From contig CAJRAX010000010.1 of NCBI GenBank assembly GCA_907165135.1, forward strand, positions 4,434-68,433: 64,000 bases of DNA, given 5' to 3'. Source of the DNA: Oikopleura dioica (Eukaryota > Animalia > Chordata). Numbering within the stretch: position 1 is the first letter of the stretch; the number at the start of each line of letters is the position of its first letter. Position numbers and translations under genes: made by a program. Below, in pieces: positions 24,320 to 58,357 of this stretch. Below the pieces are notes generated by a model. It was not told the origin of the DNA, did no database searches, and saw nothing but the letters and a program-made list of their open reading frames with translations.

Positions 24320-25615
24320 TGATACGGAAGCGGCTGTCCTGCAAGAATTTTGCTCGATCTCTAACTCTAGAATGCCAAGCCAAAACAACGAGAATTAAAT
24401 TTAAAATTTGCGTGGTTTTATTTGTGATTTGAATGACGGAAAAAGGCGCGACGCGGGGTTAAATAGCAGCGAGATTCGATCAGTGTTTTTGAACAAGCGG
24501 TTGTTTTTGAAAAACAATTTTTCTTTCGAAAACAAGGAAGAGAGCCCGTGGCTTCTTTTAGCGGTTTTTCTTGCGGGAAATCCTTTCGGATCGATTTCTT
24601 TTCGGAAGAGGAGCTGGTCGAACTTGCCAAGCAAGTTATTTTCAAAGGTTTTGGGAGCCGGCGCCGCGCGTGACGAGATAAAACGCAAATTAATTATTTT
24701 TTCATAATAAAAAGCAGAAAATAATAACAGCCACTTAAACTTCTCACTATGTGACCGTAGAAGTGACTGTTAATTATGATTGAAATAAAAAAGGATGAGA
24801 AAAGTTAAAGAATATATACAAAATTTTTACAAATAAATTGAATAAAATTTGGTCAGGATTTTATAAAATAAATTTATCAAAATTGAAATCATAGAAGAAG
24901 CAAATTCCAAGGAACATACCCGGGGGAAGTTACTGTCGCGGTTCGCACCGTATCTTCTCTTACGGATGAGCTAATTTGCGACAAGCGGACGCACTGACAG
25001 AGAGTTTGTCCGACCCCACGGCACCGAGATGATACGACGGTTTATCGGCTCGTTGGAGTAGTTGTTTTTGAAGAAGATGTTGACGGCTATCTTGTTGTAG
25101 AAGTTGAATCGTATGAACTGTCAATAATCGAACTTTAAAAATCGCAAAGCAATGACAAGAAATATCAAGAAATAAAATAAACATGCGGTTTTGCGAATTG
25201 CATATTTTTGGATGAATTGACGTCAGATCGCACTAGAATAGTCAGAAACGAATTAAGATTTTTTCCAAAGTATGCGTACATACACCTTAATCCTAGACTG
25301 AATGAACCCTTAATTAGTTTCCGACCCGTTGATTATGATGAGAGCATATGAGCATTCCAATGGTAAAACGTATAGATCGTAAGGAGATGACATGATGATA
25401 CGACAATTTTGGGTCAATCTGGCTCGTAAAAACTGACCATCTTTTCATTTTGAGTAGAATATCGTGAAATGATTTTTTGCAAATATGTCGGATCAATTTG
25501 GTGATACCAAGCTGACAAGACAAATTTAAACCAACGTAGAACCGAATTGGCGTAAATATTTGGCCGTGAAATAAAATTTTTATTTGGCTTGAGGCGTTGT
25601 TCCCTAAGGATATCA
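24320..25615 (-). repeat. 3' LTR of A2
   Basis: 1296 bp, TGATA...TATCA, direct repeat of 31228-32525. Confidence 0.96.
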
Positions 25616-25664
25616 CTGTGACCTTCCATGGGTCCCAAACGAGCATCTTTATCGCCTATCTTTT

Positions 25665-28600
25665 TCATATTTCAGTTTCAAAGTCTGGAAGAAAAACAAG
25701 AACATTTTTACGCATCGGATGATTTGGAAATTTCTTAAGCAATTCCGTTTCGATAGATGCCTGTAAAATTGTTTTTGAGCAGTTTTGAAATTTACATGGT
25801 AAGTCATAAAATGCGCATACAGTTTTTAGCTCGGGGACAGTAAGTTCGTACAACGTTCGCTCTTTTTGCACTCTAAAGACCGCAAAAAAAAGAAGTTGTC
25901 CGTTTCTCGATTTACGCCAATTCGGATATTCTCTACGAATAGTTTCCTTCACTTTTATCTGAAGTTTTGCCCTTGATTCCTCAAGATCAAAGTCCTGATT
26001 CATTTTAAAAAGAATGAATAAAAGAGAGTCTCTTGTTAATTCGTTCAGTTTGATAAATATGCCATTTTCAACATAGGTCTCCTCTATGTCGTCTGTATTT
26101 TTCCATTTATCATTTAGATGTTCGAAAAAGTCAAGATCATGATTTTCCATTTTAATTAAAATTGACATGTTTTCCAAATTATTTTCAACTGTAAATTTAG
26201 CAATTTTTCGCTCGACAACGGAATCATCAGATCTTTCCCTTCTACGTTTTAGAGCAACTAGCGGATCAATTTCGGGCAATTTATCGTACGATGTCAAATT
26301 AACAGAGAGCTCAGAATCAGAACTTGATTTCTCGGAATCAAGCACAATGTCTGATCCATTTCCTACTTGATTCAAATCAGGTTGTTGATTTCGATAAATT
26401 TTTGGTAATGGCATTTCTATCAAAAGAGTCGATGAGGATGAAAAATTATCTGGTTCTGAAGAAGAACTAGACCGCTCCCGATAAGGTTCCGATTGTAAAG
26501 ACTGATCTGACATTTCGGAGGATAAAGATTCATGCGCTATTTCCGATTCTTTTTCTGTAGAGAAATTTTTCGCAAACCGACCAAGGGAATCCCTCGAAAA
26601 AAGACAATCGTCGGAAAAAAATTCGAAAAGCTCGAGATCATTTTCTTGTACTTTTGTCACAATCTTGGGGTACTTTTCAACATCATTATTCGTCTCATAA
26701 GTTAAATTCCGCTGAGAATAACTTTTTATATGCTCTGCATGTCGCCGAAATTCGTCCTTATCATTTTTAACAGTGTACCACAGGCCACTCGGGGATTTAA
26801 ACGTAACTTCATAAGGACCAATAAATGGAGGGAATTTTTCGCGGAAATTTTTGATAAGAATTTTATCGCCTAAATTATATTCTTTGAACCGGGGATTATC
26901 AAATTTGTTCATTCTTTTTTGTTTTTCTTGTTCAATTTTTGCACGAATTTTCTCAAAATCAACGTCGATTTTATCTCCGTATGTTCGCCAATAAGGGTCT
27001 TGAAAATGATGACTGCTTTTTATACCAGTTTCTACACAAAATGGGGTTGTTCCGAGTACTGTATGTAGACTACTGTTTATTTCGTGAACAATTTCAAACA
27101 GAAAAATATCCCAATTCACCCAATTTGAACGAGCCCTAAGCCTGGCTTTTATGGTTCTATTGACGTTTTCAACTTGCCCATTAGATTGGGGATGGCGCGG
27201 GGGAATATAATGCACACCAATTTTGTTTTCTTTCAAAAATTTTTCAATCAAAACGTGTTCCTTCGCGTTATCTAAAACCATATATTTTGGAAATTTTGGA
27301 TTTCTAAATAATACGCTTCGAAATTTTTGCAGTAAATAATCCGATTTTTTGCAAGATAAGGGCTCCGCATAAACTTTTTTGCTGAAACCGTCAATAACCA
27401 CCATTACATATTTATGACCAAAATCAGTTTCTTGAAGTGGGCCGATTAAATCGAAGTACAAAATTTCAAAAGGGCCGCTTGGTGTTTCAGATTTACCTAA
27501 GGGAGGTTTGTTAGGCTGTAAATTTGGTTTTGAAATTTGACATTTGTGACATGATTTAATAAAGCTCGCGACTGTGTTTTTTAATCCCGGCCAAAAATAC
27601 TTTCTACAAATTTTTTCGGCTGTTATATCGATTCCAAAATGAGAATGATCATGATATTCGCTGCAAATTGTCTCTGTCAAAGCCTCGGGGACGCAAAATC
27701 TTTTTTGATATGCTGGAGAGTTTATTGCTAGTTCCCCGGACTCAAGAATTTCAAGGTCAGGTCTACGTAAAAAATATGGGTAAAGCTCACTAGCTGGGTT
27801 ATTTGGCCATCTATCAATTTTAACGAAACGTCTTACTTGTGATAATACTCGGTCAGATTTTTGAAACTCAACAAATGATTCAGGGGTAAACTCTATTTGA
27901 TTGATTGAACAATTTAATGTATTACGACTAAGGCAATCACTTATTTTCATTTGATGAGTTTTTCTTTGTTCAATTCGAAATGAAAATCCCTGAAGCTCCG
28001 TAAACCATCTTTGAATTTTTAAATTACTTGTCTTGAAGGATTGAGCGTATTTTACGCAAGAATTATCAGTAATCCAAAGAAAATCGACATAAGCAAGATA
28101 AGCTCTCCATCGTTCCATACATGTTTTCCCACTATATAGCTCTTTTTCCAATGTCCCGTATTTTTGTTGTGCCGGCGTAAAATTTAGCGAGTGGTAAGCT
28201 ATCGGTTGCAAGCAATTATGCGAATGATGGTGATCTTTATTTCGCTCCGCGCAAAGATAAAGAACTCCACCAAGACTATGGTTGGATGCGTCAGTCTCAA
28301 GTACAAAAACACCGTTATTTAGTGGGGGGATTTTGAGCTCCAGAGTATTATGGCAGATGATACTTTTGAGCTTTTCGAGTGAAATCGTCGCCTCTTTTGT
28401 CCAACAAAATGAACCTCTGTACGTTTTTGAAATTTCCACTCCCAGGGGTGCAAAATTTTTAATAAATTTTCTGTGCTGCGAAAGAAGTCCGAAAAGTGAT
28501 TGTGCCTCCTCTCGGTTTCTTGGAATAGAAAGATTTTTAACCGCTTCGATCTTGTCCTGTGATGGCCGTATTCTCCCGTTAAAAATTTCAAATCCCAAAA

Positions 28601-30038
28601 TGCATGCTTTTCGCTCAAAAAAACTCGCTTTGTCAATATTTATCCGTAAATTATTTTGATCTAAAATTTGAAAAAATTTAGATAAATTGGCTAGGTGTTC
28701 CTCCTCTGTTCTTGAATGGACCACTAGATCGTCAAGATATGCGCAAATTTGAGTTTTTGGCGTGTCTCGTAAAATAACATCCATGCATTTTGCGAAATGA
28801 ATAGGGGCATTTTTAAGACCCATCGGAAGCCTTTTCCAAGTAAATTGTCCGTCTTCAGTCGAGAAAGCTAGTTTTTCTCGCGATTTCTCATCCACGAGAC
28901 ACTGATGAAATCCTTTGCGCAAATCAACGCAAGAAAAAATAAGGCTATTTTCTAAAAACCCTAAAACGTCCTCAATTTGTTGCAGCGGATGATGCTGCTG
29001 AAGCGTAAATGAATTTAATTTCCTGTAATCAATACACAGTCTGAATGTACCGTTACGTTTTCTTACGAGTAACGCGGGGCTATTATAGGGTGAATTTATT
29101 CGCATTATTATGTCTTGACCAAGGTAGGACGTAAGAGTACCGGTCATTACTCCCCGCAAAGCATATGGCGTTCTGTACATATTGCTACAAATCGGGCGAT
29201 CAGTCTCAAGTTCAATCGAAAATTTTTCAAGGTTCGAGACAGGCAAATCATCGTCCTCGTCTTGAAATAAATGGGTATACACACCAAGAAGATCAAAAAA
29301 TTTTGGCTGATTGTTTTTCGATACATCGCCTATTTTTAACCGCGAAAGAAGAAAATTAAGATCTTTTTTTGAGGGCTTTATGCACGCGATCTCAGCTATT
29401 TCTGCCAGTTTCGCAAAAGCCGTGCCAGCAGGAATTTTCACTGTAGAATTCAGGGGATTTATAATAAGAATACGAAAAAATGGAGATTCGGGATCAACTC
29501 TCTGAAATGATTCTATTAATTCGAGCTTCGAATTTTTGAGCTGGCTTTTTTCTAAAAAAAGGTTCATTGATCTGTTCAAATGAGGAATTTTCAAGTCGAT
29601 TATTTGCTCACTTTTGCCTCGAAATGTGAAATTTTGTTCAGAAACGGCATAAAAACTGTCTTGCTCAATGTTATTTACTGTTGGGCTTTGTGATGAATTA
29701 TTACATAAATTTGCCATACGCTCGATAGGACCAGATTTAAATAGACGATTACGATGAAGATTGATCATTATTTCATTAGATTTCAGTGCTTCCGAACCGA
29801 GAATTGCCTCACAATTGTCATTTACAATATAAAATCGCGATTTACCCCACTTTTCCGTTTTAACATGAAAATCACATTCAACAAAACCAAGAATTTCAAT
29901 ACTTCCTCCACCATAATTTTTAGCAAAAATATCAGGGGCTTGAATTTTAACGTTATCGGGAATAAATGATTTAGGCAAAAGATTAAGTTGGGAACCTGAA
30001 TCGACAAGCATTTTTATTTTCTTTGAAAAAATTATCAT
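25665..30038 (-). CDS. pol: Pol polyprotein (PR-RT-RNase H-IN plus C-terminal extension), probably expressed as Gag-Pol; frame is open upstream to 30170
   Basis: 1457 aa ORF: LVDSGS protease, YLDD RT, LETDAS RNase H, HDHSH..CHKC zinc finger, D-D-E integrase (YFDLIGP, LDNA, NGQVE), GPY motif (FIGPY). Confidence 0.97.
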   Translation of the reverse strand: MIIFSKKIKMLVDSGSQLNLLPKSFIPDNVKIQAPDIFAKNYGGGSIEILGFVECDFHVKTEKWGKSRFYIVNDNCEAILGSEALKSNEIMINLHRNRLFKSGPIERMANLCNNSSQSPTVNNIEQDSFYAVSEQNFTFRGKSEQIIDLKIPHLNRSMNLFLEKSQLKNSKLELIESFQRVDPESPFFRILIINPLNSTVKIPAGTAFAKLAEIAEIACIKPSKKDLNFLLSRLKIGDVSKNNQPKFFDLLGVYTHLFQDEDDDLPVSNLEKFSIELETDRPICSNMYRTPYALRGVMTGTLTSYLGQDIIMRINSPYNSPALLVRKRNGTFRLCIDYRKLNSFTLQQHHPLQQIEDVLGFLENSLIFSCVDLRKGFHQCLVDEKSREKLAFSTEDGQFTWKRLPMGLKNAPIHFAKCMDVILRDTPKTQICAYLDDLVVHSRTEEEHLANLSKFFQILDQNNLRINIDKASFFERKACILGFEIFNGRIRPSQDKIEAVKNLSIPRNREEAQSLFGLLSQHRKFIKNFAPLGVEISKTYRGSFCWTKEATISLEKLKSIICHNTLELKIPPLNNGVFVLETDASNHSLGGVLYLCAERNKDHHHSHNCLQPIAYHSLNFTPAQQKYGTLEKELYSGKTCMERWRAYLAYVDFLWITDNSCVKYAQSFKTSNLKIQRWFTELQGFSFRIEQRKTHQMKISDCLSRNTLNCSINQIEFTPESFVEFQKSDRVLSQVRRFVKIDRWPNNPASELYPYFLRRPDLEILESGELAINSPAYQKRFCVPEALTETICSEYHDHSHFGIDITAEKICRKYFWPGLKNTVASFIKSCHKCQISKPNLQPNKPPLGKSETPSGPFEILYFDLIGPLQETDFGHKYVMVVIDGFSKKVYAEPLSCKKSDYLLQKFRSVLFRNPKFPKYMVLDNAKEHVLIEKFLKENKIGVHYIPPRHPQSNGQVENVNRTIKARLRARSNWVNWDIFLFEIVHEINSSLHTVLGTTPFCVETGIKSSHHFQDPYWRTYGDKIDVDFEKIRAKIEQEKQKRMNKFDNPRFKEYNLGDKILIKNFREKFPPFIGPYEVTFKSPSGLWYTVKNDKDEFRRHAEHIKSYSQRNLTYETNNDVEKYPKIVTKVQENDLELFEFFSDDCLFSRDSLGRFAKNFSTEKESEIAHESLSSEMSDQSLQSEPYRERSSSSSEPDNFSSSSTLLIEMPLPKIYRNQQPDLNQVGNGSDIVLDSEKSSSDSELSVNLTSYDKLPEIDPLVALKRRRERSDDSVVERKIAKFTVENNLENMSILIKMENHDLDFFEHLNDKWKNTDDIEETYVENGIFIKLNELTRDSLLFILFKMNQDFDLEESRAKLQIKVKETIRREYPNWRKSRNGQLLFFAVFRVQKERTLYELTVPELKTVCAFYDLPCKFQNCSKTILQASIETELLKKFPNHPMRKNVLVFLPDFETEI

Positions 30039-30084
30039 TTCTACAAAATATTGTAATCCAATGCGAAAAATTGAACAAGTTCTT

Positions 30085-30131
30085 GGAACTGGTGCCTGAC
30101 CAGGGCTTTCAGTTCCATTTACTCGTTTTTT
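30085..30131 (-). promoter_or_regulatory. -1 programmed ribosomal frameshift signal (gag-pol) of A
   Basis: A AAA AAC heptamer in gag frame (30131-30125), 8-nt spacer, stem GGAACTG/CAGTTCC; pol is in the -1 frame and open across the site. Confidence 0.8.
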
Positions 30132-31291
30132 GAAGTTTCCTCTCCCTCGATCCGAGCAGCTCTGTAAATTCTATCGGGATTATCGGGACAAGCCGTTTTC
30201 ATGTGGCCTTTTTTCTGACAAAAGTGGCAGGTAATAAAGGGGCAATGTGATCTAAAATGAGTGTCTGTGTTACAAAATCCACAAAATCGTCGAGGCCTTG
30301 GCCGATCCGAATTCGGCGCGCCCAAATTTCGACTTTGAAAATTCCGTTGCTGGTTATTTTGGCGCGTCAAACTCTGATCGTTGCGGCGATCAACTTCTAA
30401 TTTTGCAATTGTTGCCGTTAGTTTTTCAATTTGATCATGAAGCGCACACGCCCGTTTTTCCGCCGCCTCTTCTGATTTTTTCTGTTCAATTTTCAATTGA
30501 GAAATTTGGTCCTCGAAGGACATTGTCGATTTCGAAATTAAGTCAGAAGTCGACTGAAAAAACGAGCCAAGTTTCGCGTCAATTTCGATTTGGGCAATTT
30601 TGGGGATAGTTTCATTTCGTTTTCTTTTGTCAAGAAATTTGGATATTTCCTCGGGGGTTTTTTCAAGCATACACTGATCGCGAAGAAAATTCTGCAGTTC
30701 AGGCGTGAGCGATTTTCTAAATTGCGCGTCGATAATGTATTCTCTCGCGTCCGGTTTTTGCGTTATTTTCTCCGCGACTGTTTTAACACGTGACAAAAAA
30801 ATCTCGAATTTTTCATTGTTCTCGCTCTTTCGGGCGAGATTTTCCATTTTTTCTTTGTTTCGAAGGATTTTTTCCTCGGGCGATTCGTCGCCAAAAACAG
30901 ACGTCAAAAAAGACAATTTTTCCTCAGCTGATTCAAATCCATAAAGATCTTCCCCGTATTCCCTAAGAAATTCGGGCTCGCATGAATTGTAAACAAAAGA
31001 ACTTGAAAGGCGCGAAAATTGAGCCTCGAGGTCCTCTTTGTTTTCGGGTTTATTTTCCGCGAGAGATTTTTCAAAAATCCATTTTGCTCGCTGTAATTTG
31101 TCTTTTATTGTGGAATTAATCAAATTAAATTCAAAATTTCTCATTCCTAATCTTATCATTTGATTCGGGGAAACAGAAAAAAGCGCATGACTCTTGTACA
31201 GTACCTCTTCAGGAGTTGGGGTCACCATGATACGGAAGCGGCTGTCCTGCAAGAATTTTGCTCGATCTCTAACTCTAGAATGCCAAGCCAA
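30119..31291 (-). CDS. gag: Gag with two CCHC zinc knuckles; alternative start at ATG 31228
   Basis: 390 aa ORF; CGFCNTDTHFRSHC and CHFCQKKGHMKTAC (CX2CX4HX4C); alignable by eye to gag of element B. Confidence 0.93.
   Translation of the reverse strand: MAWHSRVRDRAKFLQDSRFRIMVTPTPEEVLYKSHALFSVSPNQMIRLGMRNFEFNLINSTIKDKLQRAKWIFEKSLAENKPENKEDLEAQFSRLSSSFVYNSCEPEFLREYGEDLYGFESAEEKLSFLTSVFGDESPEEKILRNKEKMENLARKSENNEKFEIFLSRVKTVAEKITQKPDAREYIIDAQFRKSLTPELQNFLRDQCMLEKTPEEISKFLDKRKRNETIPKIAQIEIDAKLGSFFQSTSDLISKSTMSFEDQISQLKIEQKKSEEAAEKRACALHDQIEKLTATIAKLEVDRRNDQSLTRQNNQQRNFQSRNLGAPNSDRPRPRRFCGFCNTDTHFRSHCPFITCHFCQKKGHMKTACPDNPDRIYRAARIEGEETSKNE
31215..31227 (-). promoter_or_regulatory. Primer binding site, tRNA-Trp-like (copy A2)
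   Basis: TGGTGACCCCAAC immediately after the LTR terminal TATCA on the minus strand. Confidence 0.75.
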
Positions 31292-32525
31292 AACAACGAG
31301 AATTAAATTTAAAATTTGCGTGGTTTTATTTGTGATTTGAATGACGGAAAAAGGCGCGACGCGGGGTTAAATAGCAGCGAGATTCGATCAGTGTTTTTGA
31401 ACAAGCGGTTGTTTTTGAAAAACAATTTTTCTTTCGAAAACAAGGAAGAGAGCCCGTGGCTTCTTTTAGCGGTTTTTCTTGCGGGAAATCCTTTCGGATC
31501 GATTTCTTTTCGGAAGAGGAGCTGGTCGAACTTGCCAAGCAAGTTATTTTCAAAGGTTTTGGGAGCCGGCGCCGCGCGTGACGAGATAAAACGCAAATTA
31601 ATTATTTTTTTCATAATAAAAAGCAGAAAATAATAACAGCCACTTAAACTTCTCACTATGTGACCGTAGAAGTGACTGTTAATTATGATTGAAATAAATA
31701 AAGGATGAGAAAAGTAAAAGAATATATACAAAATTTTAACAAATAAATTGAATAAAATTTGGTCAGGATTTTATAAAATAAATTTATCAAAATTGAAATC
31801 ATAGAAGAAGCAAATTCCAAGGAACATACCCGGGGGAAGTTACTGTCGCGGTTCGCACCGTATCTTCTCTTACGGATGAGCTAATTTGCGACAAGCGGAC
31901 GCACTGACAGAGAGTTTGTCCGACCCCACGGCACCGAGATGATACGACGGTTTATCGGCTCGTTGGAGTAGTTGTTTTTGAAGAAGATGTTGACGGCTAT
32001 CTTGTTGTAGAAGTTGAATCGTATGAACTGTCAATAATCGAACTTTAAAAATCGCAAAGCAATGACAAGAAATATCAAGAAATAAAATAAACATGCGGTT
32101 TTGCGAATTGCATATTTTTGGATGAATTGACGTCAGATCGCACTAGAATAGTCAGAAACGAATTAAGATTTTTCCAAAGTATGCGTACATACACCTTAAT
32201 CCTAGACTGAATGAACCCTTAATTAGTTTCCGACCCGTTGATTATGATGAGAGCATATGAGCATTCCAATGGTAAAACGTATAGATCGTAAGGAGATGAC
32301 ATGATGATACGACAATTTTGGGTCAATCTGGCTCGTAAAAACTGACCATCTTTTCATTTTGAGTAGAATATCGTGAAATGATTTTTTGCAAATATGTCGG
32401 ATCAATTTGGTGATACCAAGCTGACAAGACAAATTTAAACCAACGTAGAACCGAATTGGCGTAAATATTTGGCCGTGAAATAAAATTTTTTATTTGGCTT
32501 GAGGCGTTGTTCCCTAAGGATATCA
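31228..32525 (-). repeat. 5' LTR of A2
   Basis: 1298 bp, TGATA...TATCA, followed on the minus strand by the PBS. Confidence 0.96.
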
Positions 32526-35500: not shown

Positions 35501-35845
35501 ACTGTTAATCATCTGAAAACGCCAAAAAACGCATCAGAATTTTTTTTAATTTTTTTACGATTTTTTTGAACTGTAAATTATCTGAAAACGCCAAAAAACG
35601 CATCAGAATTTTTTTTTATTTTTTTTATTTTTATGAACTGTAAATCATTTAAAAACGCCAAAAAACGCATCAGAATTTTTCTTAATTTTTTTTATATTTT
35701 TATGAACTGTAAATCATCTGAAAACGCCAAAAAACGCATCAGAATTTCCTTAATTTTTTTCGATTTTTTTGAACTGTAAATTATCTGAAAACGCAAAAAA
35801 AACGCATCAGAATTTTTTTTATTTTTTTTCGATTTTTATGAACTG
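32526..35845 (+). repeat. Subtelomeric satellite block
   Basis: Same monomer; variant order continues that seen left of A2. Confidence 0.98.
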
Positions 35846-36965
35846 TGATACCTAATGTGAAAAAAAAATAATATACTGAATCGCCCAATCACGGCCAAAA
35901 TAAAAAACAATGCATGATTTCACAAGCTTACATTAAGTGCTAAAAAATATGGCAAACCAAAAAAAAAAGAAAAAATAAAGGTTTGATGATTAGACTGAGG
36001 GTAATTTCTAGCATGAGAACGCTAGAAAAATTGTTAACAGTATTTGCACGTACGCGTGTGTTCACATATTTCTAGGCACATTAGCCAGCCCTTTTGATAT
36101 CTTACGATTCAAAAGGTTTTATTATTAATCCCTTTTAGGTTTAAAATAATTTACGCATGAATTTATCTCACGATCTTCAAAATCAACCATCCTTACAATA
36201 TTCTTGTTCTTTTCTTTATTCATTTCCTTTCAAAATAAGTTGACTGTACTTGGACGACAAATCTTTTTGGACGCCGTTGGAAGACTCCTTCTTACTGTTG
36301 AGCTTCCCGTAAGGGCTGAACGCTAAGTAGCCGCGGGCAGAATATCCCAAACCGGCAAAAAGCGTTTATAAGCGCTCACAGGTAATCGAACTCGCCGAGG
36401 ACCGGTTACTGCTTTTCTAGGAAACTGACCATTTTCGACATTGCAGTTACACGTGCGCGTGACGCCGACCCGACAAGAACGACAACGACGACATCTACTA
36501 CTACGACAACGACGACGGAAACCCTGCCTGGACCGACAATGGAATTCTGACAACAACAACGACTAATGCCCTGGAATTTGTCGAGACTTGTAATAAAACA
36601 GTGGGTCACATAGTGAGAAAGCTGTTTTATTACAAGTTTTTGGCAAAAAGCGCCACCTATGGCGAATTGATAAAAATAGGAATTTTTCAAAAATATCGTA
36701 ACATATTATATAATTATCTGAAATTGATGTTACGAACACAGATGATGAAAGTTTGCCGATAACGCCTTACGTAAGAAGCCACAATGGCCGAAATGGCCCC
36801 ATTTACGAAAACAATAGAAAAATCCGGAACCAACCGGTTTCCGAAATGGAACTTTTCAAAATTTGAAATTTCAAAAATCATTCTCGATTATCAATAAAAC
36901 CACCACCAGCTTATTTTATTTTTCGTGTTCTTTGCAAGGATTTTAGCAAGCCGCAATTTGTATCA
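35846..36965 (+). repeat. 5' LTR of B
   Basis: 1120 bp, TGATAC...GTATCA; direct repeat of 42971-44123. Confidence 0.96.
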
Positions 36966-38234
36966 GTGATGACCACAGAGACCGAATCCACAGAGGCGAA
37001 GCCGATTATAATGGCAAAAAGTAAGTCAGCTCCATTTCCCGAGGAAATTTTGATGGCCAGTCTGTCCCCTTTATCTGGATCTCAGTTGATTTCACCGTCC
37101 AGTCAGTTGTATCAGTTCCAATTGAATATGAGTATTTTAGAGGATAGGTTGTGTCAATTTAGCGCTCTTTTTGAAAGAAGTCTGAAGGACTTTTCTCGAA
37201 CGGAGGACTCAGATTTAAAGGCTCAATTTGAGCGAAAGCTTTTAAATTGTATTCGTAGTTCTTGCTCTGAAGAATTTCTAGTGCAATATGGCCGGGACTT
37301 AGCCAATGAAACTTGTTACAAAAAGGCTCTTGAGCTTTTGAGGGAGATTTTTCGGGAGGAAAGCGAATCTGACAGAAAAGCGCGAGCGACGGATGAATTC
37401 GAAAATTTGGTCCGAAGGACCGATTTGAATGAAAAATTCGTTTCATTCTTGAGAAGAATTAAATCGCTTGCGCGACAGATTGATAACCGTAAAGACGCGG
37501 TTGATTTTTTGGTCGAAAATAAGTTTAAAAAATTTCTTGAGCCCGCAAATTTGAGTTTTTTACGCGATCATAAAATGCAAAACTCGAGCGCAGAAAAAAT
37601 CGCTGAATTTTTAGACGAACGGGAAAGACATTGTCTTGCCCAAGTTTCAGCGGTTAACACTGATCGAATGAATTCATTTATCGATCAAACTTCGGAAATG
37701 TTGTCTAAGCAATTGGAAGCATTTAATGAGAGTAATAAAAAGAGTCAAGAGGCTCATGAAAAGAAAAATGAGGAACTTTCGAAGGCCCTCAAAGATTTGA
37801 CAGCGACTGTGAACGAATTGAAGTTAGAAAAACAGAAAAATTCTGATAACAATTTTGTCACGAAGCAACCTTTTTCGCGAGAGCAAAATTATCGTCAGGG
37901 CGATTTTAATACTTTCCGAAATCCTCAGAATTTTCGTCAAGCAGGGTTTAGTCCTTCTCCAGGTTACCCTCAAAATTTTCAAAATTTTCAAAATCTAGGA
38001 GCGCCCCGCAACTTTCAGATGCAACAGAGTCGCCCTGTTTTATTTTGTTCTGAATGTGGTAAATTCGGGCACATGAAACGTAATTGCCGATTTATTGAGT
38101 GCCATGGCTGTGGACAAAAAGGACACATTCAACGCTTTTGTCAGAGAAACAATAATTATGGTCAAAATAATAATCGAGATAATAGGAATTTCCCTCCCTT
38201 TTCGCGTGGTTCGGGAAACGTGTACTCGGGTTGA
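36966..38234 (+). CDS. gag: Gag with two CCHC zinc knuckles
   Basis: 422 aa; CSECGKFGHMKRNC and CHGCGQKGHIQRFC; homologous to gag of A (e.g. EFLVQYGRDL vs EFLREYGEDL, FLRDH vs FLRDQ). Confidence 0.93.
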   Translation: MMTTETESTEAKPIIMAKSKSAPFPEEILMASLSPLSGSQLISPSSQLYQFQLNMSILEDRLCQFSALFERSLKDFSRTEDSDLKAQFERKLLNCIRSSCSEEFLVQYGRDLANETCYKKALELLREIFREESESDRKARATDEFENLVRRTDLNEKFVSFLRRIKSLARQIDNRKDAVDFLVENKFKKFLEPANLSFLRDHKMQNSSAEKIAEFLDERERHCLAQVSAVNTDRMNSFIDQTSEMLSKQLEAFNESNKKSQEAHEKKNEELSKALKDLTATVNELKLEKQKNSDNNFVTKQPFSREQNYRQGDFNTFRNPQNFRQAGFSPSPGYPQNFQNFQNLGAPRNFQMQQSRPVLFCSECGKFGHMKRNCRFIECHGCGQKGHIQRFCQRNNNYGQNNNRDNRNFPPFSRGSGNVYSG

Positions 38235-38258
38235 GCTCTGGTCAAGCTTTCAATCCGA
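38213..38258 (+). promoter_or_regulatory. -1 programmed ribosomal frameshift signal (gag-pro) of B
   Basis: G GGA AAC heptamer in gag frame (38213-38219), 6-nt spacer, stem TCGGGTTGA/TCAATCCGA with inner AGCT/AGCT; protease ORF is in the -1 frame. Confidence 0.82.
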
Positions 38259-38815
38259 AAACTTTTGTTAGTTCTGTAAAAAGTTTAGGTCGCCAACATT
38301 TTATTGATGCTCACATTTTTAACAAAAACGTAAAATTGATGATTGATACAGGCTCACAGATAAATCTTATTGGACGTGAGTATGTGCCTGATTCAGAAAA
38401 AATATACAAAAATGATTTAAAAATTTTCGCGTATAATAATACTATTGTTCCTGTTGTTGGATATATATTGACAAATTTAATTATTGATGGACAAAACTGG
38501 GGTCGCGCGCGATTCTATGTTGTTAATGATCGATTGAACTGTATTTTGGGAACTTCTTCAATCGAGGAGCTTGAACTTATTATTAATCTTCATCGCAAGA
38601 GATTGATTAAAGGCGGTGCGATTGAACGATTTGCAAATATTTCTGAAATAACAGTAGAGCCAGACAAGGGTGAAAATGAACAGTTAGAGGGTATTCTTAT
38701 GGATACTATTACTTTAAAACCAAGAACAGAACAATTAGTAGATTTACACGTTCGAAACATAAAAAACTGTCGTCATTATTTTTTGAAAACTCGTGTCTTA
38801 AAAACTGTAAATTAG
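38231..38815 (+). CDS. pol: Aspartic protease part of pol; homology switches to the next frame at ~38761
   Basis: MIDTGSQ catalytic motif; WGRARFYVVND vs WGKSRFYIVND in A. Confidence 0.88.
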   Translation: MSSGQAFNPKTFVSSVKSLGRQHFIDAHIFNKNVKLMIDTGSQINLIGREYVPDSEKIYKNDLKIFAYNNTIVPVVGYILTNLIIDGQNWGRARFYVVNDRLNCILGTSSIEELELIINLHRKRLIKGGAIERFANISEITVEPDKGENEQLEGILMDTITLKPRTEQLVDLHVRNIKNCRHYFLKTRVLKTVN

Positions 38816-41800
38816 AATTTCTCCCCTCCTTGCAAGAAGTCTCGCCTGATTCACCAATTTTTCGCATATTGATTCTTAACATGACGGATTCTTCAATAAA
38901 ACTTGATAAAGGGACAAAACTAGTAGAGCTTTTTGAAGTATGTAAAGTCGGTCAGATTAAAGAGGAAGCAGTTGAAGAAATTCTTCAAAATATAAAAGTT
39001 GGCCCGATTTCGAGTGAAAATAAGCCAAAATTTTTTGATCTTATGAAAGAGTTTTGCTATCTTTTATTAAAAGAAGCAGATTATATACCGGAATGTTCAA
39101 TTGCCGAATTCAATATAGATACCATTGATTCTGTCCCTTCTGTATCTCAGCCATATAGAACAGCCTTTGCGTTACGGCAAACTATGTGGGATATTCTGAA
39201 TAATTATTTGGAGAATAAAGTTATCGAGCCCTGTATATCAGTATGGAATTCTCCATGTTTGTTAGTAAGAAAAAAAGGTGGATCTTGGCGCCTCGTAGTT
39301 GACTACAGAAAATTGAATCAGAATACTCATCAGTTTCATTATCCGCTACCATCGCTTGAAGATTCTATTTCTTATATGCAAAATAGCAAAATATTTAGTG
39401 CATGCGATCTGTATAAGGGATTCCATCAGGTTCGAATTAGCCCGGAGTCTGCTAATAAAACGGCATTTTCAACTGAACACGGCCAATTTAGATTTTTAAG
39501 AATGCCGATGGGTCTAAAAAATTCCCCTTGTTTTTTTATGCTTGTTATGGATAAGGCTCTTGAAAATATCCCAAAGTCAGCTGTCCTAGCTTACATGGAT
39601 GATGTTTGTATTCATAGCGTTTCAGAGGCTGAGCATTTAGTTAATTTAAGAAAATTTTTCATGGCCTTAGCGGCGAATAATTTACGATTAAATGCAAAAA
39701 AATGCAGTTTTTTCGAAAATTCAGTCGATTTTTGTGGATATAACATTGGTAATGGAAAAGTAAAACCATCGAAAGCAAGAATTGAATCGATTAAAAATTT
39801 GAGAGAGCCAAAAAACAAAAATGAGGCAATGTCAATTTTCGGTATGCTAAATTATCATAGAAGATTCATTAAAAATTTTGCTGATAAAGCGAAGGCAATA
39901 ACTAATTCTTATAAAGGTCAATTTTTTTGGGATTCTGAAGCTCAACAAGCATTTGAAAATTTAAAAAAGGAAATAACAGAGAATGCCCTTGAATTATCTA
40001 TAGCGCCTATTGAAGGTGGGAGACTTGTTTTGGAAACGGATGCAAGCCATAGCGGTTATGGGGGTGTTCTTTATCTTTGCGAGGAAAAGAATAACACTGA
40101 TGGCCATTTACATGGGGAACGGTGCCTGCGGCCCGTCGCTTACAATTCGGGTAATTTTACGGAAGCTCAACTTAAATACATAGTTTTGGAAAAGGAAATG
40201 TTAAGTGCAAAATTATCCATGGAGAAATGGTCTGTTTATCTAAAATTCCGGAAATTTGATTTGATTACTGACAACTCCAATCTTAAATATATTCAGTCCT
40301 TTCGTACAAATAATAGTAGATTACAGCGTTGGATTGCGGATATAATGGCATTTGATTTTAGAATCATACTAAAACCGTCGTCTCAAATGAAAATTTCGGA
40401 TTGTTTGTCGCGTTTTACCAAAGTATCGCAGCTAAAAGCTGCGGAATCGAATTTTCTTGATCTTCAGAAACTTGACCCGGATCTCAAACAAATCATTAAT
40501 TTTACAAAGATCGACAGATGGCCAAACGTTCCACCGCCAAAATTACTTCCGTATTTGATTCACCGTCACGATTTTTATTTTCTCGAATCGGGAGAGCTAG
40601 CGATTCGATCAACAGACAAAACCTTTAGGATTTGCGTTCCAGAAATTAAACAAAATGAAATAATTGAGACATATCATAATGATTGCCATGATGGCATTGA
40701 TATAACATATTCCAAAATTATTCGAAAATATTACTGGAAAAATATGAAGGAGACAATTACAGGCTTCATCAAAACGTGTTTTTACTGTCAAACGAGAAAG
40801 CCAAATAATCACCCTAATCGGGCCCCGACGAAAACTTTTGTGACCCCTGAAGGGCCTTATCAAGCGATGGGATTTGACCTTATTGGGCCTCTTAGACCAA
40901 CTGATTTAGGGATGATCTACATTTTTACCGCCGTTGATTTTTTTTCCAAAAAAGTTTATGCTGAGCCCTTAAATTCCAAAAAATCGGATTATTTATTAGG
41001 AAAATTCAAAAATATGATTTTTCGCAATCCAGTCTTTCCGCAATTTTGTTTATTCGATAACGCGCCTGAATTTATTAAAATTAAATCATTTTGTGAGACT
41101 CACAGTATCAAGTTTAATCAATCGCCGCCTCGACATCCATCAACAAATGGAGCCGTCGAAAACATAAACAGAACTCTTAAATCCAGACTTCGAGCCAAAT
41201 GCGATATGATTAATTGGGACCAATGTATAAATGAAGTCCTTCATTCGATAAATAGTTCAATTCACTCAGTTACAAAATTTTCGCCCTTTACGATTGAAAC
41301 GGGGATTAAAAACCCTCAATTTATTAATGATTTGAATTGGCGAAAAAATGAAAATAAAATGGAAATCGATTTTAATGAAATTAAGGCAAGAATTGACCGT
41401 GAGAAACAAGCAAGATGTGAGAAATCGAATAATTTAAATTTTAAGGAATATCAATTGAATGATAAGGTGCTTATCAAAAATTTTCGCTCAAAATTTCCCC
41501 CATTTATCGGTCCTATGACAATTATCGAGAAGCATTTGACAGTATATACCTGTAGAGATGATAAAACTGCAAAAATTTTCAAACGCCATGCTGATGATCT
41601 AAAGATTTTTTATATACGTAGAGAAACAACTGAAAGCTTAGATACTGGTTTAGTTGATCAATCGGAGCCGGCTTCAGCATGTGAAAAAGATTCAGGATTT
41701 TGTGAATTTCTGTTTTCACAAGGATCAATTTTCGAGGATTTTTCTCAATTTGAATGTTTAAAGCCGCATGAGAATGTCGAAGATTCGACGGGCGAATCGA

Positions 41801-42249
41801 TAATAAATGCAGAATTTTCTTATGGCGAAAACAATGATTTAGAAATAATTTCTCGGGCGGAAGAATTATCAAGTGAAAGTGAAAGGCCTGTAGAAAATAA
41901 AACTGACGAAACTTCTGATCAAGTGATTTTAGAGCCTCACTCTTCGGAGAAAATTGAAAGTTCGTTAGAATCGGATTTGGATACTGACACTAATGAGGAT
42001 GAAAATCAAGTGATACAAGGGAATAATCTAAGCCATATTGCTAATGAATCAGATTTAACGGGAGAAATTGATATTGTTGCGGGCAATATTAGGCAAGAAA
42101 GCTTTTCGGACGAAACATCAATGCGGGTTGAGTTAACGGCTTATTCTGATCTTCAGATTACAGAAAATTATCAACCTATCCCTCAAAAGTCAAATAAACG
42201 CAGATACAATTTTTCAAGCGACTCTGATTCAGATATTCGGGAGGACTAA
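38761..42249 (+). CDS. pol: RT-RNase H-integrase part of pol (ORF track start 38830; homology to A extends back to ~38761)
   Basis: YMDD RT, LETDAS RNase H, HNDCH..CFYC, FDLIGP/FDNA/NGAVE integrase, FIGPM; upstream LFFENSCLKNCKLEF matches LFLEKSQLKNSKLEL of A. Confidence 0.93.
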   Translation, partial: KKLSSLFFENSCLKNCKLEFLPSLQEVSPDSPIFRILILNMTDSSIKLDKGTKLVELFEVCKVGQIKEEAVEEILQNIKVGPISSENKPKFFDLMKEFCYLLLKEADYIPECSIAEFNIDTIDSVPSVSQPYRTAFALRQTMWDILNNYLENKVIEPCISVWNSPCLLVRKKGGSWRLVVDYRKLNQNTHQFHYPLPSLEDSISYMQNSKIFSACDLYKGFHQVRISPESANKTAFSTEHGQFRFLRMPMGLKNSPCFFMLVMDKALENIPKSAVLAYMDDVCIHSVSEAEHLVNLRKFFMALAANNLRLNAKKCSFFENSVDFCGYNIGNGKVKPSKARIESIKNLREPKNKNEAMSIFGMLNYHRRFIKNFADKAKAITNSYKGQFFWDSEAQQAFENLKKEITENALELSIAPIEGGRLVLETDASHSGYGGVLYLCEEKNNTDGHLHGERCLRPVAYNSGNFTEAQLKYIVLEKEMLSAKLSMEKWSVYLKFRKFDLITDNSNLKYIQSFRTNNSRLQRWIADIMAFDFRIILKPSSQMKISDCLSRFTKVSQLKAAESNFLDLQKLDPDLKQIINFTKIDRWPNVPPPKLLPYLIHRHDFYFLESGELAIRSTDKTFRICVPEIKQNEIIETYHNDCHDGIDITYSKIIRKYYWKNMKETITGFIKTCFYCQTRKPNNHPNRAPTKTFVTPEGPYQAMGFDLIGPLRPTDLGMIYIFTAVDFFSKKVYAEPLNSKKSDYLLGKFKNMIFRNPVFPQFCLFDNAPEFIKIKSFCETHSIKFNQSPPRHPSTNGAVENINRTLKSRLRAKCDMINWDQCINEVLHSINSSIHSVTKFSPFTIETGIKNPQFINDLNWRKNENKMEIDFNEIKARIDREKQARCEKSNNLNFKEYQLNDKVLIKNFRSKFPPFIGPMTIIEKHLTVYTCRDDKTAKIFKRHADDLKIFYIRRETTESLDTGLVDQSEPASACEKDSGFCEFLFSQGSIFEDFSQFECLKPHENVEDSTGESIINAEFSYGENNDLEIISRAEELSSESERPVENKTDETSDQVILEPHSSEKIESSLESDLDTDTNEDENQVIQGNNLSHIANESDLTGEIDIVAGNIRQESFSDETSMRVELTAYSDLQITENYQPIPQKSNKRRYNFSSDSDSDIRED

Positions 42250-42909
42250 ATTTTAGTTCAAGACCCAATTGTTTTGGCCAAAAAACCAATTTCGGGAAAA
42301 AAATTGGAGCAAGAAACAATCAAAAAGAAATCGGCTTCGTCTTCTCTTCCGGATTTGAATTTTTCAAATTTTTTTCCAAATTTTGACCAAAATAAGGGTG
42401 ATCATGAAATGATTGATTTTGAAGACTTAAAATTAATTGTGATCTTTGAAAACGAACACGAAAATCTTTTTTCTGAAATTGATAAATCATCCATTAATTA
42501 CGATAAAAATACAGTAATCGAAACAGCTTGCGTACTAAAACAGTCAGAATTACCAAAAGATGTAATTCTATTTATTTGTAGACAATTTAAAATAGATCAT
42601 ACGCCGGCTGAAAAAATGGCTGAATTAAATATTCGAATAAGAGATTGGTTAATCGAGAATCAGCCAAATTGGCACAAGGGAAGTTCGGGGGAGTATTTAT
42701 TTCTTTGCAATCTTTTTTTGAGAAGAAATTTCACTCTTTCGGAATTCCGGGCCCCAGAACTTAAATGTCTGGCATCCTTTTATTTATTACCAAAATTAAA
42801 TTTTATTTCAAGATCAGTTTTCTCTGAATACATCAAAAGTTATTTTTCTGAACACTTTCCGAATCAACCATGTAAAAATCGTGATCTTCTTTTTGGCCCA
42901 GACATTTAA
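42250..42909 (+). CDS. Detached C-terminal extension of integrase (tandem SAP/HeH-like repeats), in frame with pol after a single TAA
   Basis: Same frame as pol; PNWHK/PNWRK, PELKCLASFYLLP/PELKTVCAFYDLP and FPNQP/FPNHP match the C-terminus of pol A. Confidence 0.8.
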   Translation: MLVQDPIVLAKKPISGKKLEQETIKKKSASSSLPDLNFSNFFPNFDQNKGDHEMIDFEDLKLIVIFENEHENLFSEIDKSSINYDKNTVIETACVLKQSELPKDVILFICRQFKIDHTPAEKMAELNIRIRDWLIENQPNWHKGSSGEYLFLCNLFLRRNFTLSEFRAPELKCLASFYLLPKLNFISRSVFSEYIKSYFSEHFPNQPCKNRDLLFGPDI

Positions 42910-42970
42910 GTATAGGATTTCCATTTTCAGTATAAAAGAAAAAAAAATATATCCCCTGGCGCGGGCATAG

Positions 42971-44123
42971 TGATACCTAATGTGAAAAAAAAATAATATA
43001 CTGAATCGCCAAATCACGGCCAAAATAAAAAACAATGCATGATTTCACAAGCTTACATTAAGTGCTAATCAAGTTGATTAGGCCTCGTCAAAAATCAAGA
43101 AAAAATATGGCAAACCAAAAAAAATAGAAAAAATAAAGGTTTGATGATTAGACTGAGGGTTATTTCTAGCATGAGAACGCTAGAAAAATTGTTAACAGTA
43201 TTTGCACGTACGCGTGTGTTCACATATTTCTAGGCACATTAGCCAGCCCTTTTGATATCTTACGATTCAAAAGGTTTTATTATTAATCCCTTTTAGGTTT
43301 AAACTAATTTACGCATGAATTTATCTCACGATCTTCATAATCAACCATCCTTACAATATTCTTGTTCTTTTCTTTATTTATTTCCTTTCAAAATAAGTTG
43401 ACTGTACTTGGACGACAAATCTTTTTGGACGCCGTTGGAAGACTCCTTCTTACTGTTGAGCTTCCCGTAAGGGCTGAACGCTAAGTAGCCGCGGGCAGAA
43501 TATCCCAAACCGGCAAAAAGCGTTTATAAGCGCTCACAGGTAATCGAACTCGCCGAGGACCGGTTACTGCTTTTCTAGGAAACTGACCATTTTCGACATT
43601 GCAGTTACACGTGCGCGTGACGCCGACCCGACAAGAACGACAACGACGACATCTACTACTACGACAACGACGACGGAAACCTTGCCTGGACCGACAATGG
43701 AATTCTGACAACAACAACGACTAATGCCCTGGAATTTGTCGAGACTTGTAATAAAACAGTGGGTCACATAGTGAGAAAGCTGTTTTATTACAAGTTTTTG
43801 GCAAAAAGCGCCACCTATGGCGAATTGATAAAAATAGAAATTTTTCAACAAAATCGTAACATATTATATAATTATCTGAAATTGATGTTACGTAAACAGA
43901 TGATGAAAGTTAGCCGATTACGCCTTACGTAAGAAGCCACAATGGCCGAAATGGCCCCATTTACAAAAACAATAGAAAAATCCGGAACCAACCGGTTTCC
44001 GAAATGGAACTTTTCAAAATTTGAAATTTCAAAAATCATTCTCGATTATCAATAAAACCACCACCAGCTTATTTTATTTTTCGTGTTCTTTGCAAGGATT
44101 TTAGCAAGCCGCAATTTGTATCA
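42971..44123 (+). repeat. 3' LTR of B
   Basis: 1153 bp; has 33 bp (43067-43099) absent from the 5' LTR and about 15 substitutions counted by eye. Confidence 0.96.
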
Positions 44124-57088: not shown

Positions 57089-57091
57089 AGC

Positions 57092-58354: not shown

Positions 58355-58357
58355 TTA

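What the first reader, a model, noticed from the sequence alone, without database searches (positions are those of the whole stretch)
25668..26190. Unrecognised tandem 65-aa SAP/HeH-like domain at the integrase C-terminus (candidate targeting module)
Seen: after the GPY motif and a long acidic, Ser-rich linker, pol A ends in two repeats exactly 65 codons apart: KLNELTRDSLLFIL..SRAKLQIKVKETIRREYPNW..LLF (starts 26051) and TLYELTVPELKTVCAFYDLP..SKTILQASIETELLKKFPNH..LVF (starts 25856). B has the same pair with the same 195-nt spacing (42538 and 42733), while the linker has diverged. Known: L-x-x-L-x-V-x-EL-K-x-x-x-x-x-x-x-L-P followed by a second amphipathic helix is the SAP/LEM/HeH pattern, which binds AT-rich DNA or chromatin partners; chromodomains occupy this position in chromoviruses. 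Inference: a new integrase tether, plausibly binding the A/T-tract satellite.
Basis: partly seen in the sequence, partly recalled or inferred. Interest (0 to 1): 0.82.

Follow-up and report, generated by a model that had tools for sequence, protein, structure and literature searches.

The report
Duplicated SAP-like domain ending a retrotransposon integrase
Two jumping-gene copies near a chromosome end carry, at the tail of their integrase, a conserved and previously undescribed ~165-residue domain built from an ancient duplication of a SAP/LEM-like two-helix unit. It may steer insertion into the surrounding AT-rich satellite, but that role is untested.

Summary
Pol A (25665-30038, minus strand, intact, 1457 aa) and pol B end in the same ~165-aa module, with the two repeats 65 codons apart at the stated coordinates.

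**The repeat.** Inside one protein it is not significant: BLASTP finds nothing and identity is 11/63. At family level it is. Profile-profile comparison gives 98.7% probability and E 3.4e-16, against at most 2.7% in 40 column shuffles.

**The fold.** AlphaFold2 gives one compact domain (pLDDT 89, pTM 0.85). The whole domain matches nothing in Pfam, PDB or BFVD.

**SAP/LEM/HeH resemblance.** The two-helix core resembles HeH folds (Ku70 SAP, emerin LEM, FAN1 SAP, Rho N-terminal domain, MANF C-terminal domain). Every test is below threshold, so this is likeness, not membership.

**Distribution and conservation.** The domain marks a Ty3/gypsy clade known only from marine and other metagenomes. It is always at the pol C-terminus and is far better conserved (41%) than the linker (about 20%).

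**Targeting.** This remains inference. Five insertions from four LTR families sit in one satellite here, but two distant relatives are not in satellite.

It is a new variant of the known theme of integrase C-terminal accessory modules.

The parts
25677..26186 (-). Whole C-terminal accessory domain of pol A (pol residues ~1285-1454). One compact predicted globule.
   Evidence: AF2 with a 25-sequence alignment gives pLDDT 89.4 and pTM 0.85. The family HMM covers positions 1-171.
26064..26186 (-). N-terminal cap of the domain (strand 10-13 and helix 19-29 of the 174-aa segment). Present in the A/B-like subclade and absent from the more distant subclade.
   Evidence: The distant members match only profile positions ~41-169.
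25863..26063 (-). Repeat 1: strand, helix, 10-residue loop, helix, conserved P-N-W-R-K turn, strand.
25668..25862 (-). Repeat 2: the same unit. It carries the L-x-x-L-S-x-P-E-L-K ... Y-x-L-P ... S-K pattern that gives the weak SAP, Rho_N and LEM matches. It ends in P-x-H-P ... L-I-F.
26190..26690 (-). Acidic, Ser-rich, fast-evolving linker between the GPY/F module and the domain (pol residues 1117-1283). Its last ~20 residues (26190-26249) are basic, conserved and NLS-like.
   Evidence: Identity to 10 relatives is 17-19% across pol residues 1101-1250, against 57% in the core and 41% in the domain. Composition is S 18%, E 11%, D 9%.
25665..30038 (-). Intact pol ORF of element A (protease-like N-terminus, RT, RNase H, H2C2, rve, GPY/F, linker, new domain).
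24320..32525 (-). Element A: LTRs of ~1296 bp that are 99.5% identical, termini TGATAC...ATATCA, 5-bp target duplication GAAAA, inserted in the satellite. The pol stop lies ~50 bp from the 3' LTR, so there is no third ORF.
42406..42903 (+). The same domain in element B (repeats start at 42538 and 42733). It is cut off from pol B by an in-frame stop at 42247-42249.
35846..44123 (+). Element B: an older copy with LTRs ~95.7% identical, termini TGATAC...TGTATCA, target duplication AACTG, inserted in the same satellite.

Best explanation
**What it is**
The last ~165 residues of the integrase form an autonomous, positively charged accessory domain. It hangs on a long disordered acidic linker that contains a short basic NLS-like stretch.

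The domain arose by an ancient tandem duplication of a ~65-residue unit (strand, helix, extended loop, helix, strand). Its two-helix core has the helix-extension-helix geometry of SAP, LEM and Rho_N domains. The two units and an N-terminal strand-helix cap pack into one globule.

**How it most likely works**
The domain is a tether. It binds DNA or chromatin at the integration target and brings the tetheredintegrase-cDNA complex there. In the A/B-type elements the target would be the AT-rich subtelomeric satellite, a place where insertions do little harm.

**Shown versus inferred**
- Shown: existence, duplication, conservation, predicted fold, basic charge, restriction to pol C-termini, and location of the copies in the satellite.
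- Inferred: nucleic-acid or chromatin binding, and any effect on target choice.
For: - **Duplication.** hhalign of repeat 1 against repeat 2 gives 98.7% probability and E 3.4e-16 (an earlier run gave 97.8%). Shuffled controls reach at most 2.7%.
- **Fold.** AF2 gives pLDDT 89.4 and pTM 0.85. Both repeats have the same secondary-structure pattern. Repeat 2 folded alone gives pLDDT 82.
- **HeH likeness.**
- **Purifying selection.** The domain is 41% identical to 10 relatives with no gaps, against ~20% for the linker and 57% for the catalytic core. A and B share 30% identity in the domain, while their linkers cannot be aligned.
- **Clade hallmark.** 83 of 167 fetched proteins carry the domain, always as the last residues of pol. 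Clade members (at least 36% pol identity to A) carry it unless truncated; two (P0095, P0097) miss the HMM and only look like diverged versions by eye. No Ty3/gypsy outgroup has it.
- **Charge.** The two-repeat core is basic: median pI 9.2 and net charge +4 across 79 members. Two K/R columns are nearly invariant.
- **Local context.** Five insertions from four unrelated LTR families share TGATAC...TATCA termini. All lie in one 65-69 bp A/T-tract satellite next to the telomere, and no other transposon type is present. Two solo LTRs sit at the identical monomer position.
Against: - No HeH-family match reaches significance or a gathering score.
- The repeat 1 profile finds no SAP or LEM protein in the PDB.
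- The position of the insertions within the monomer is not statistically distinctive. My own rough estimates: about 0.1 for four complete insertions falling within a 20-bp arc of the monomer, and about 0.14 for two or more of the five sites coinciding.
- Transposons also accumulate in heterochromatin passively, because insertions there are tolerated.
- The window is almost entirely satellite, so enrichment cannot be measured.
- The two distant relatives with readable flanks are not in satellite DNA (L002, L004).
Confidence: 0.5

Rival explanations
1. Protein-protein adaptor rather than DNA reader. The LEM-like unit binds a host chromatin protein. That could be BAF, the partner of LEM domains and a known cofactor of retroviral pre-integration complexes, or a heterochromatin or telomere protein. 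Any targeting would then be indirect, as with Ty5 integrase and Sir4 or with chromodomains and H3K9me.
For: Repeat 2 carries L-S-x-x-E-L ... Y-x-L-P followed by a long 11-residue loop. This is closer to the LEM pattern than to the SAP G-L turn. Four emerin LEM sequences appear among the 17 PDB profile hits, at E 0.18-0.32. A protein partner would also explain why distant relatives are not in satellite DNA.
Against: The emerin matches cover only 21 residues and are not significant. Pfam reports no LEM hit. Foldseek hits are SAP, Rho_N and MANF C-terminal domain rather than LEM. The basic charge fits nucleic-acid binding.
Confidence: 0.25
2. The domain is functional but unrelated to target choice. 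It could drive integrase multimerisation, handle cDNA ends or RNA inside the particle (Rho_N-like and Ku70 SAP-like domains bind nucleic acids non-specifically), or support nuclear import. The copies in the satellite would then reflect passive retention in heterochromatin.
For: The domain is conserved across the clade regardless of genomic context. L002 and L004 are not in satellite. The pseudo-symmetric two-unit globule could be an interaction surface. An NLS-like basic stretch lies just upstream.
Against: All known integrase C-terminal add-ons at this position act in targeting (chromodomain, Ty1, Ty3 and Ty5 tethers; established knowledge). Four different families have co-located in one array with precise 5-bp duplications.
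Confidence: 0.2
3. Not a real domain or repeat. The region is a fortuitous low-complexity tail, and the 65-codon periodicity is chance.
For: BLASTP of the two repeats within A finds nothing. Identity is 11/63 aa.
Against: Profile-profile E is 3.4e-16 with clean shuffle controls. More than 80 homologues carry the domain. AF2 pTM is 0.85. The alignment across the clade has no gaps.
Confidence: 0.02

Closest known systems
SAP domain (Pfam PF02037; Ku70, PIAS, SAF-A, Hcc-1, FAN1 SAP) and MANF/CDNF C-terminal SAP-like domain
   Same: Two amphipathic helices joined by an extended segment. The pattern is L-x-x-L-x-x-x-E-L-K before helix 1 and a conserved Lys at the start of helix 2. Superposition gives 1.4-1.9 A over 41-46 residues. 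Ku70 SAP is the best PDB profile hit.
   Different: The match is below the Pfam threshold (12.9 bits against 23.9). The connecting loop is 10-11 residues with [LI]-P instead of the short Gly-containing turn. Each unit is flanked by beta strands and ends in a conserved P-x-[HW]-[PR]-[KR] ... L-[LI]-F motif. Two units plus a cap form a single globule that has no SAP counterpart.
LEM domain (emerin, LAP2, MAN1) and Rho_N (PF07498), other members of the HeH clan
   Same: A long inter-helix loop and the Y-x-[LI]-P motif, as in LEM. Rho_N reaches 19.8 bits in one member and is seen in 4 of 25 members. Emerin appears at E 0.18-0.32.
   Different: No match reaches threshold. BAF binding (LEM) and RNA binding in tandem with a cold-shock domain (Rho) cannot be inferred.
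Chromodomain of chromoviruses, and other integrase C-terminal tethers (Ty5 targeting domain with Sir4, Ty1 with AC40, Ty3 with TFIIIB/TFIIIC)
   Same: The position is the same: after the GPY/F module, at the extreme C-terminus of a Ty3/gypsy integrase, on a variable linker. The proposed logic is also the same: tether the integration complex to harmless chromatin.
   Different: The fold is unrelated and no chromodomain is detected. The ligand is unknown and there is no experimental evidence for targeting.
SAP domains reported in other transposons (Zisupton DNA transposons; a Chlamys Penelope-like element of Physarum)
   Same: An HeH-type putative DNA-binding module recruited by a mobile element (PMC8557442).
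   Different: Those are canonical single SAP motifs in other element classes and at other positions. Here the unit is divergent, duplicated and strand-flanked, and is fused to an LTR-retrotransposon integrase.
Tor Ty3/gypsy elements of the appendicularian Oikopleura
   Same: Relatives occur in Tara Oceans and other marine metagenomes. Some carry an env-sized third ORF. The window has a TTAGGG telomere. O. dioica subtelomeres are reported to hold retrotransposons and tandem repeats, with Tor as the dominant LTR family (PMC8008620; PMC4402516).
   Different: No Tor reference sequence was available, so identity with Tor is an untested guess. The Tor papers I read do not mention an integrase C-terminal domain.

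Membership tests
SAP domain (PF02037) | Match to the family HMM at or above the gathering score | tested here: not met
   12.9 bits, E 0.086, against a cut-off of 23.9. The match covers repeat 2 of A only, in 1 of 25 members.
SAP domain (PF02037) | Helix, extended turn, helix geometry of ~35 residues | tested here: met
   AF2 predicts H53-62 / H73-87 and H118-127 / H139-153. Rmsd is 1.4-1.9 A over 41-46 residues to MANF C-terminal domain, Rho_N, Hcc-1 SAP and endonuclease VII (TMq 0.50-0.53 for the repeat-2 model). Foldseek E-values are only 0.8-7.
SAP domain (PF02037) | Conserved Gly-containing short turn between the helices | tested here: not met
   The loop is 10-11 residues. Repeat 2 has Y-x-L-P and repeat 1 is variable.
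SAP domain (PF02037) | Binds (AT-rich / S/MAR) DNA | not testable with these tools
   The only indication is indirect: median pI 9.2 and net charge +4.
LEM domain (PF03020) | HMM or sequence-profile match | tested here: inconclusive
   Pfam reports no LEM hit. Emerin LEM appears at E 0.18-0.32 over 21 residues in the PDB profile search.
LEM domain (PF03020) | Binds BAF | not testable with these tools
   No data.
HeH clan (SAP, LEM, Rho_N, HeH) | Consistent remote similarity to several clan members | tested here: inconclusive
   Rho_N reaches 19.8 bits against a cut-off of 24.9. Ku70, emerin and FAN1 are among 17 PDB hits. HeH proteins dominate the low-rmsd Foldseek hits. All of these are sub-threshold, and the repeat 1 profile finds none.
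Chromovirus chromodomain | Chromo domain after the integrase GPY/F module | tested here: not met
   No chromo hit in pol A or in the tail. The predicted fold is different.
Ty3/gypsy (Metaviridae) LTR retrotransposon | LTRs with TG..CA termini, 5-bp target duplication, and gag followed by PR-RT-RH-IN in that order with H2C2, rve and GPY/F | tested here: met
Tor elements of Oikopleura | Sequence clustering with Tor pol references | not testable with these tools
   No reference sequences were at hand. Only circumstantial evidence supports this.

The most novel reading that the evidence does not exclude
The integrase carries its own sequence- or shape-reading tether. On this reading the duplicated HeH module recognises the A-tract satellite (or BAF-bound chromatin) directly. 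This would confine a whole clade of chordate-plankton retrovirus-like elements to subtelomeric arrays. It would be a built-in safe-harbour system mechanistically distinct from chromodomain, Ty1, Ty3 and Ty5 tethering, and the first HeH-type integration tether.
Probability: 0.25. Interest if true: 0.8.

Novelty: new variant of a known kind. Interest (0 to 1): 0.58.

Why it matters
Integrase C-terminal add-ons are how LTR retrotransposons and retroviruses choose where to land. Only a handful of such tethers are understood: chromodomains, the Ty1, Ty3 and Ty5 tethers, and LEDGF or BET binding in retroviruses.

This one is confidently folded, conserved across a clade and undescribed. It has HeH character and lies in elements sitting in an A/T-tract subtelomeric satellite. 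That makes a new targeting principle directly testable with an isolated ~165-residue protein. The domain is also a candidate new Pfam family and a diagnostic marker for a Ty3/gypsy clade currently visible mostly in marine metagenomes.

Tried and rejected
- **BLASTP of the two repeats within A** found nothing. The repeat needs profiles to be seen.
- **Whole-domain Foldseek** against PDB and BFVD gave no significant match.
- **Repeat 2 alone against PDB** gave geometric HeH matches only, with E of at least 0.9.
- **Repeat 1 profile against PDB sequences** gave no HeH protein.
- **The whole-domain profile against PDB** gave only spurious seryl-tRNA synthetase coiled-coil hits.
- **The Ku70 construct 1jjr** scored a whole-sequence E of 1e-6. 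That value is inflated because the deposited sequence contains the SAP segment twice. Per-domain E is 0.07 and 0.28.
- **Profile search for stand-alone proteins of 96-305 aa** carrying the domain returned only two pol fragments. No host donor gene was seen.
- **Exact-match scans of metagenome contigs** for the end of A's LTR and for the satellite core both returned 0. No extra insertion sites could be collected.
- **Host identification from the flanking gene in L002** gave only a USP25/28-like, intron-split gene, which suggests a metazoan. The length filter of the protein search made a naming search pointless.
- **Literature searches** for SAP or helix-extension-helix at LTR integrase C-termini found nothing relevant.
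- **Monomer-phase preference of insertions** was considered and judged not significant with five sites.
Full report
**1. Context**

The window is a chromosome end.
- A 65-69 bp satellite at about 23% GC, rich in T tracts, fills 1430-24319, 32522-35846 and 45350-60673. It flips orientation near 57092.
- The satellite abuts (TTAGGG)n at 60671-64000.

Five LTR-element insertions are embedded in the satellite.

| Insertion | Coordinates | Strand | LTR identity | Target duplication / flank |
|---|---|---|---|---|
| A | 24320-32525 | minus | 99.5% | GAAAA |
| A' (second, truncated copy of A) | 1-1430 | minus | 99.6% to A | right flank AACGC |
| B | 35846-44123 | plus | ~95.7% | AACTG |
| Solo LTR C | 44342-45349 | not determined | n/a | GTAAA |
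| Solo LTR D | 48262-49583 | not determined | n/a | GTAAA |

The four LTR families are unrelated in sequence, but all begin with TGATAC and end with TATCA.

**2. The observation**

Pol A (25665..30038, minus strand) is an uninterrupted 1457-codon ORF. Pfam finds RVT_1, RNase H, Integrase_H2C2 and rve. After the GPY motif comes a linker of about 170 residues that is rich in Ser, Glu and Asp.

The repeats start at 26051 and 25856 in A, and at 42538 and 42733 in B. Both pairs are exactly 65 codons apart.

A and B are 48% identical over 943 residues of the pol core. Their linkers cannot be aligned. Their last ~166 residues are 30% identical (E 2e-25). In B an in-frame stop at 42247-42249 lies between the linker and the domain.

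**3. Is the repeat real?**

Within one protein it is not demonstrable. BLASTP finds nothing. Identity is 11/63 residues, and 66/189 at the DNA level.

With family alignments it is clear. I built alignments of 45 sequences for repeat 1 (A3) and 46 for repeat 2 (A2).
- hhalign gives 98.7% probability, E 3.4e-16, over 59 aligned columns.
- A first, smaller run gave 97.8% and E 1e-12.
- Forty column-shuffled controls gave at most 2.7% probability and E 0.017 at best.

This is an ancient internal duplication. It is not a recent DNA repeat.

**4. The family**

- An exhaustive phmmer search of 1.84 billion representative proteins with the 174-residue tail found 22 clusters. Every one places the match at the very end of a pol-sized protein or is a fragment.
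- Word-seeded searches added close relatives (52-57% identity in the tail) and a pol clade of about 50 clusters at 36-66% identity. Beyond these, identity drops to 34% or less for generic Ty3/gypsy proteins.
- An HMM of the tail detects the domain in 83 of the 167 proteins fetched. Members of the clade carry it unless they are truncated, and no outgroup does. Two clade members (P0095, P0097) are missed by the HMM and only appear to carry diverged versions by eye.
- The more distant subclade has only the two repeats (profile positions ~41-169). It lacks the N-terminal ~40 residues.
- All relatives come from metagenome assemblies (ENA, JGI, Logan) and none is named. Several are from Tara Oceans or other marine samples.
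- One flank holds an intron-split USP25/28-like gene, which suggests a metazoan host.
- Some distant members have a 737-838-residue third ORF after pol with no Pfam match.
- These features match what is published for Tor elements of Oikopleura: a TTAGGG telomere, subtelomeres rich in retrotransposons and tandem repeats, and Tor as the dominant LTR family (PMC8008620; PMC4402516). I could not test this assignment.
- A profile search restricted to proteins of 96-305 residues found only two pol fragments. No stand-alone cellular homologue is visible.

**5. Conservation**

Against ten relatives, per-residue identity is as follows:

| Region | Identity | Gaps |
|---|---|---|
| RT-IN core | 57% | none |
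| Linker (pol residues 1101-1250) | 17-19% | many |
| Terminal domain | 41% | essentially none |

The ~20 residues just before the domain are basic and conserved, and look like an NLS. The two-repeat core is basic throughout the family: median pI 9.2 and median net charge +4 across 79 members. Two K/R columns are nearly invariant.

**6. Fold**

AlphaFold2 on the 25-sequence alignment gives mean pLDDT 89.4 and pTM 0.85. That indicates one compact domain. Its elements are strand 10-13, helix 19-29, strand 43-47, helix 53-62, helix 73-87, strand 99-105, helix 118-127, helix 139-153 and strand 163-166.

Each repeat is therefore strand, helix (10 residues), extended loop (10-11), helix (15), strand. 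A strand-helix cap precedes the two repeats. Repeat 2 folded alone keeps the same elements (pLDDT 82).

**7. Comparison with known families**

*Whole domain.* There is no significant Foldseek match in the PDB (best E 0.77) or BFVD (best E 0.13). There is no Pfam family, and no PDB sequence match apart from spurious coiled coils.

*Two-helix core.* All weak signals converge on the helix-extension-helix superfamily.
- Pfam SAP at 12.9 bits, E 0.086, on repeat 2 of A.
- Pfam Rho_N on the same segment in 4 of 25 members, best 19.8 bits and E 7.8e-4, against a gathering score of 24.9.
- The repeat 2 profile against 177,635 PDB sequences returns 17 hits. They include Ku70 SAP (per-domain E 0.07), four emerin LEM sequences (E 0.18-0.32) and FAN1 SAP (E 0.48-1.4).
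- The top whole-domain Foldseek hit is the SAP-like C-terminal domain of MANF (44 columns, 1.9 A). Ku70 SAP, DEK and ERI1 appear lower in the list.
- The repeat 2 model superimposes at 1.4-1.7 A over 41-46 residues (TMq 0.50-0.53) on Rho N-terminal domain, MANF and T4 endonuclease VII. It aligns less tightly (2.8-4.2 A) with Hcc-1 SAP and FAN1 SAP.

None of these is individually significant. The repeat 1 profile finds no HeH protein. The SAP glycine turn is replaced by a longer loop with Y-x-L-P, which is more LEM-like.

My reading is that the unit very probably has an HeH-type fold. It is not a demonstrable member of SAP or LEM. The complete strand-flanked, duplicated, capped globule is new.

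**8. Function**

*Shown.* The domain is a selectively maintained, basic, autonomous fold. It is fused by a disordered linker to the integrase of a whole element clade, at the position where other Ty3/gypsy elements carry a chromodomain.

*Inferred.* It tethers the integration complex to DNA or chromatin. The local picture fits targeting to the satellite: four families with the same LTR termini, one array, no other transposon type, and precise 5-bp duplications. C and D sit at the identical monomer position, and B overlaps that site by one base.

*Why the evidence is weak.*
- Five sites do not give a significant phase preference.
- Heterochromatin passively retains insertions.
- The window offers no non-satellite control.
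- The two distant relatives with readable flanks lie in unique or coding-like DNA.
- Exact-match scans for further copies or satellite in metagenomes returned nothing.

The main rivals are a LEM-like protein adaptor (for example for BAF or a heterochromatin protein) and a role outside target choice.

**9. Novelty**

Full-text searches found no description of a SAP or HeH module at an LTR-retrotransposon integrase C-terminus. SAP domains are reported in Zisupton DNA transposons and in one Chlamys Penelope-like element (PMC8557442). A 2026 survey of env-carrying Ty3/gypsy elements that includes Tor mentions only chromodomains at the pol C-terminus (PMC13524379).

I therefore class this as a new variant of a known kind: an integrase C-terminal accessory or tether module built on a new, duplicated HeH-like fold.

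**10. Care taken**

The element appears to be a retrovirus-like element of an animal.
- The stop in B is only located, and no way of mending it is discussed.
- The functional assay that would alter an active copy is referred.

Noticed in passing
window 44342-45349 and 48262-49583: Two solo LTRs from two unrelated families (1008 and 1322 bp). Both have TGATAC...GGTATCA termini. Both are inserted at the identical position of the satellite monomer, AACT[GTAAA]TCAT, with the target duplication GTAAA. Element B's site (AACTG) overlaps that position by one base.
   Followed up: partly
window 1-1430: A second copy of element A in the same orientation, with an LTR 99.6% identical to A's. It runs off the left edge of the window. 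Its right flank is AACGC..., a third position in the monomer. Together with A's 99.5% LTR identity and intact gag-like and pol ORFs, this suggests a recently active family.
   Followed up: partly
window 57092 and 60671-64000: The satellite array inverts its orientation about 3.6 kb before it meets ~3.3 kb of (TTAGGG)n. A variant with 177 or 287 bp higher-order periodicity lies at 54488-55118.
   Followed up: no
window 26190-26249 (-): A conserved basic stretch (K-R-R-R-E-R ... R-K-I-A-K-F) sits at the end of the otherwise hypervariable acidic linker, immediately before the domain. It is a possible bipartite nuclear localisation signal.
   Followed up: no
window 42247-42249 (+): An in-frame stop in element B lies between the integrase linker and the C-terminal domain. 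B is also the older copy, with LTRs ~95.7% identical.
   Followed up: yes
L004:7868-10384 and L005:6244-8457: Distant clade members from marine metagenomes carry a third ORF of 838 and 737 residues after pol, with no Pfam match. These may be env-like genes, as in Tor3 and Tor4 elements. A and B have no room for one.
   Followed up: partly
L003, L006-L009: Several metagenome contigs show two related but clearly different elements (79-88% identical) lying head to tail about 7 kb apart. This could reflect insertion next to resident copies, very long diverged LTRs containing an ORF (a weak RING-finger hit in L006-L008), or assembly artefacts.
   Followed up: no
L002:11715-17107 (-): The flank of a distant relative holds an intron-split deubiquitinase gene with a UIM motif and the UCH Cys box (USP25/28-like). 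This points to a metazoan host. A/T-tract tandem repeats lie within 0.5-1.5 kb on both sides of that element, but the element itself is not inside them.
   Followed up: partly
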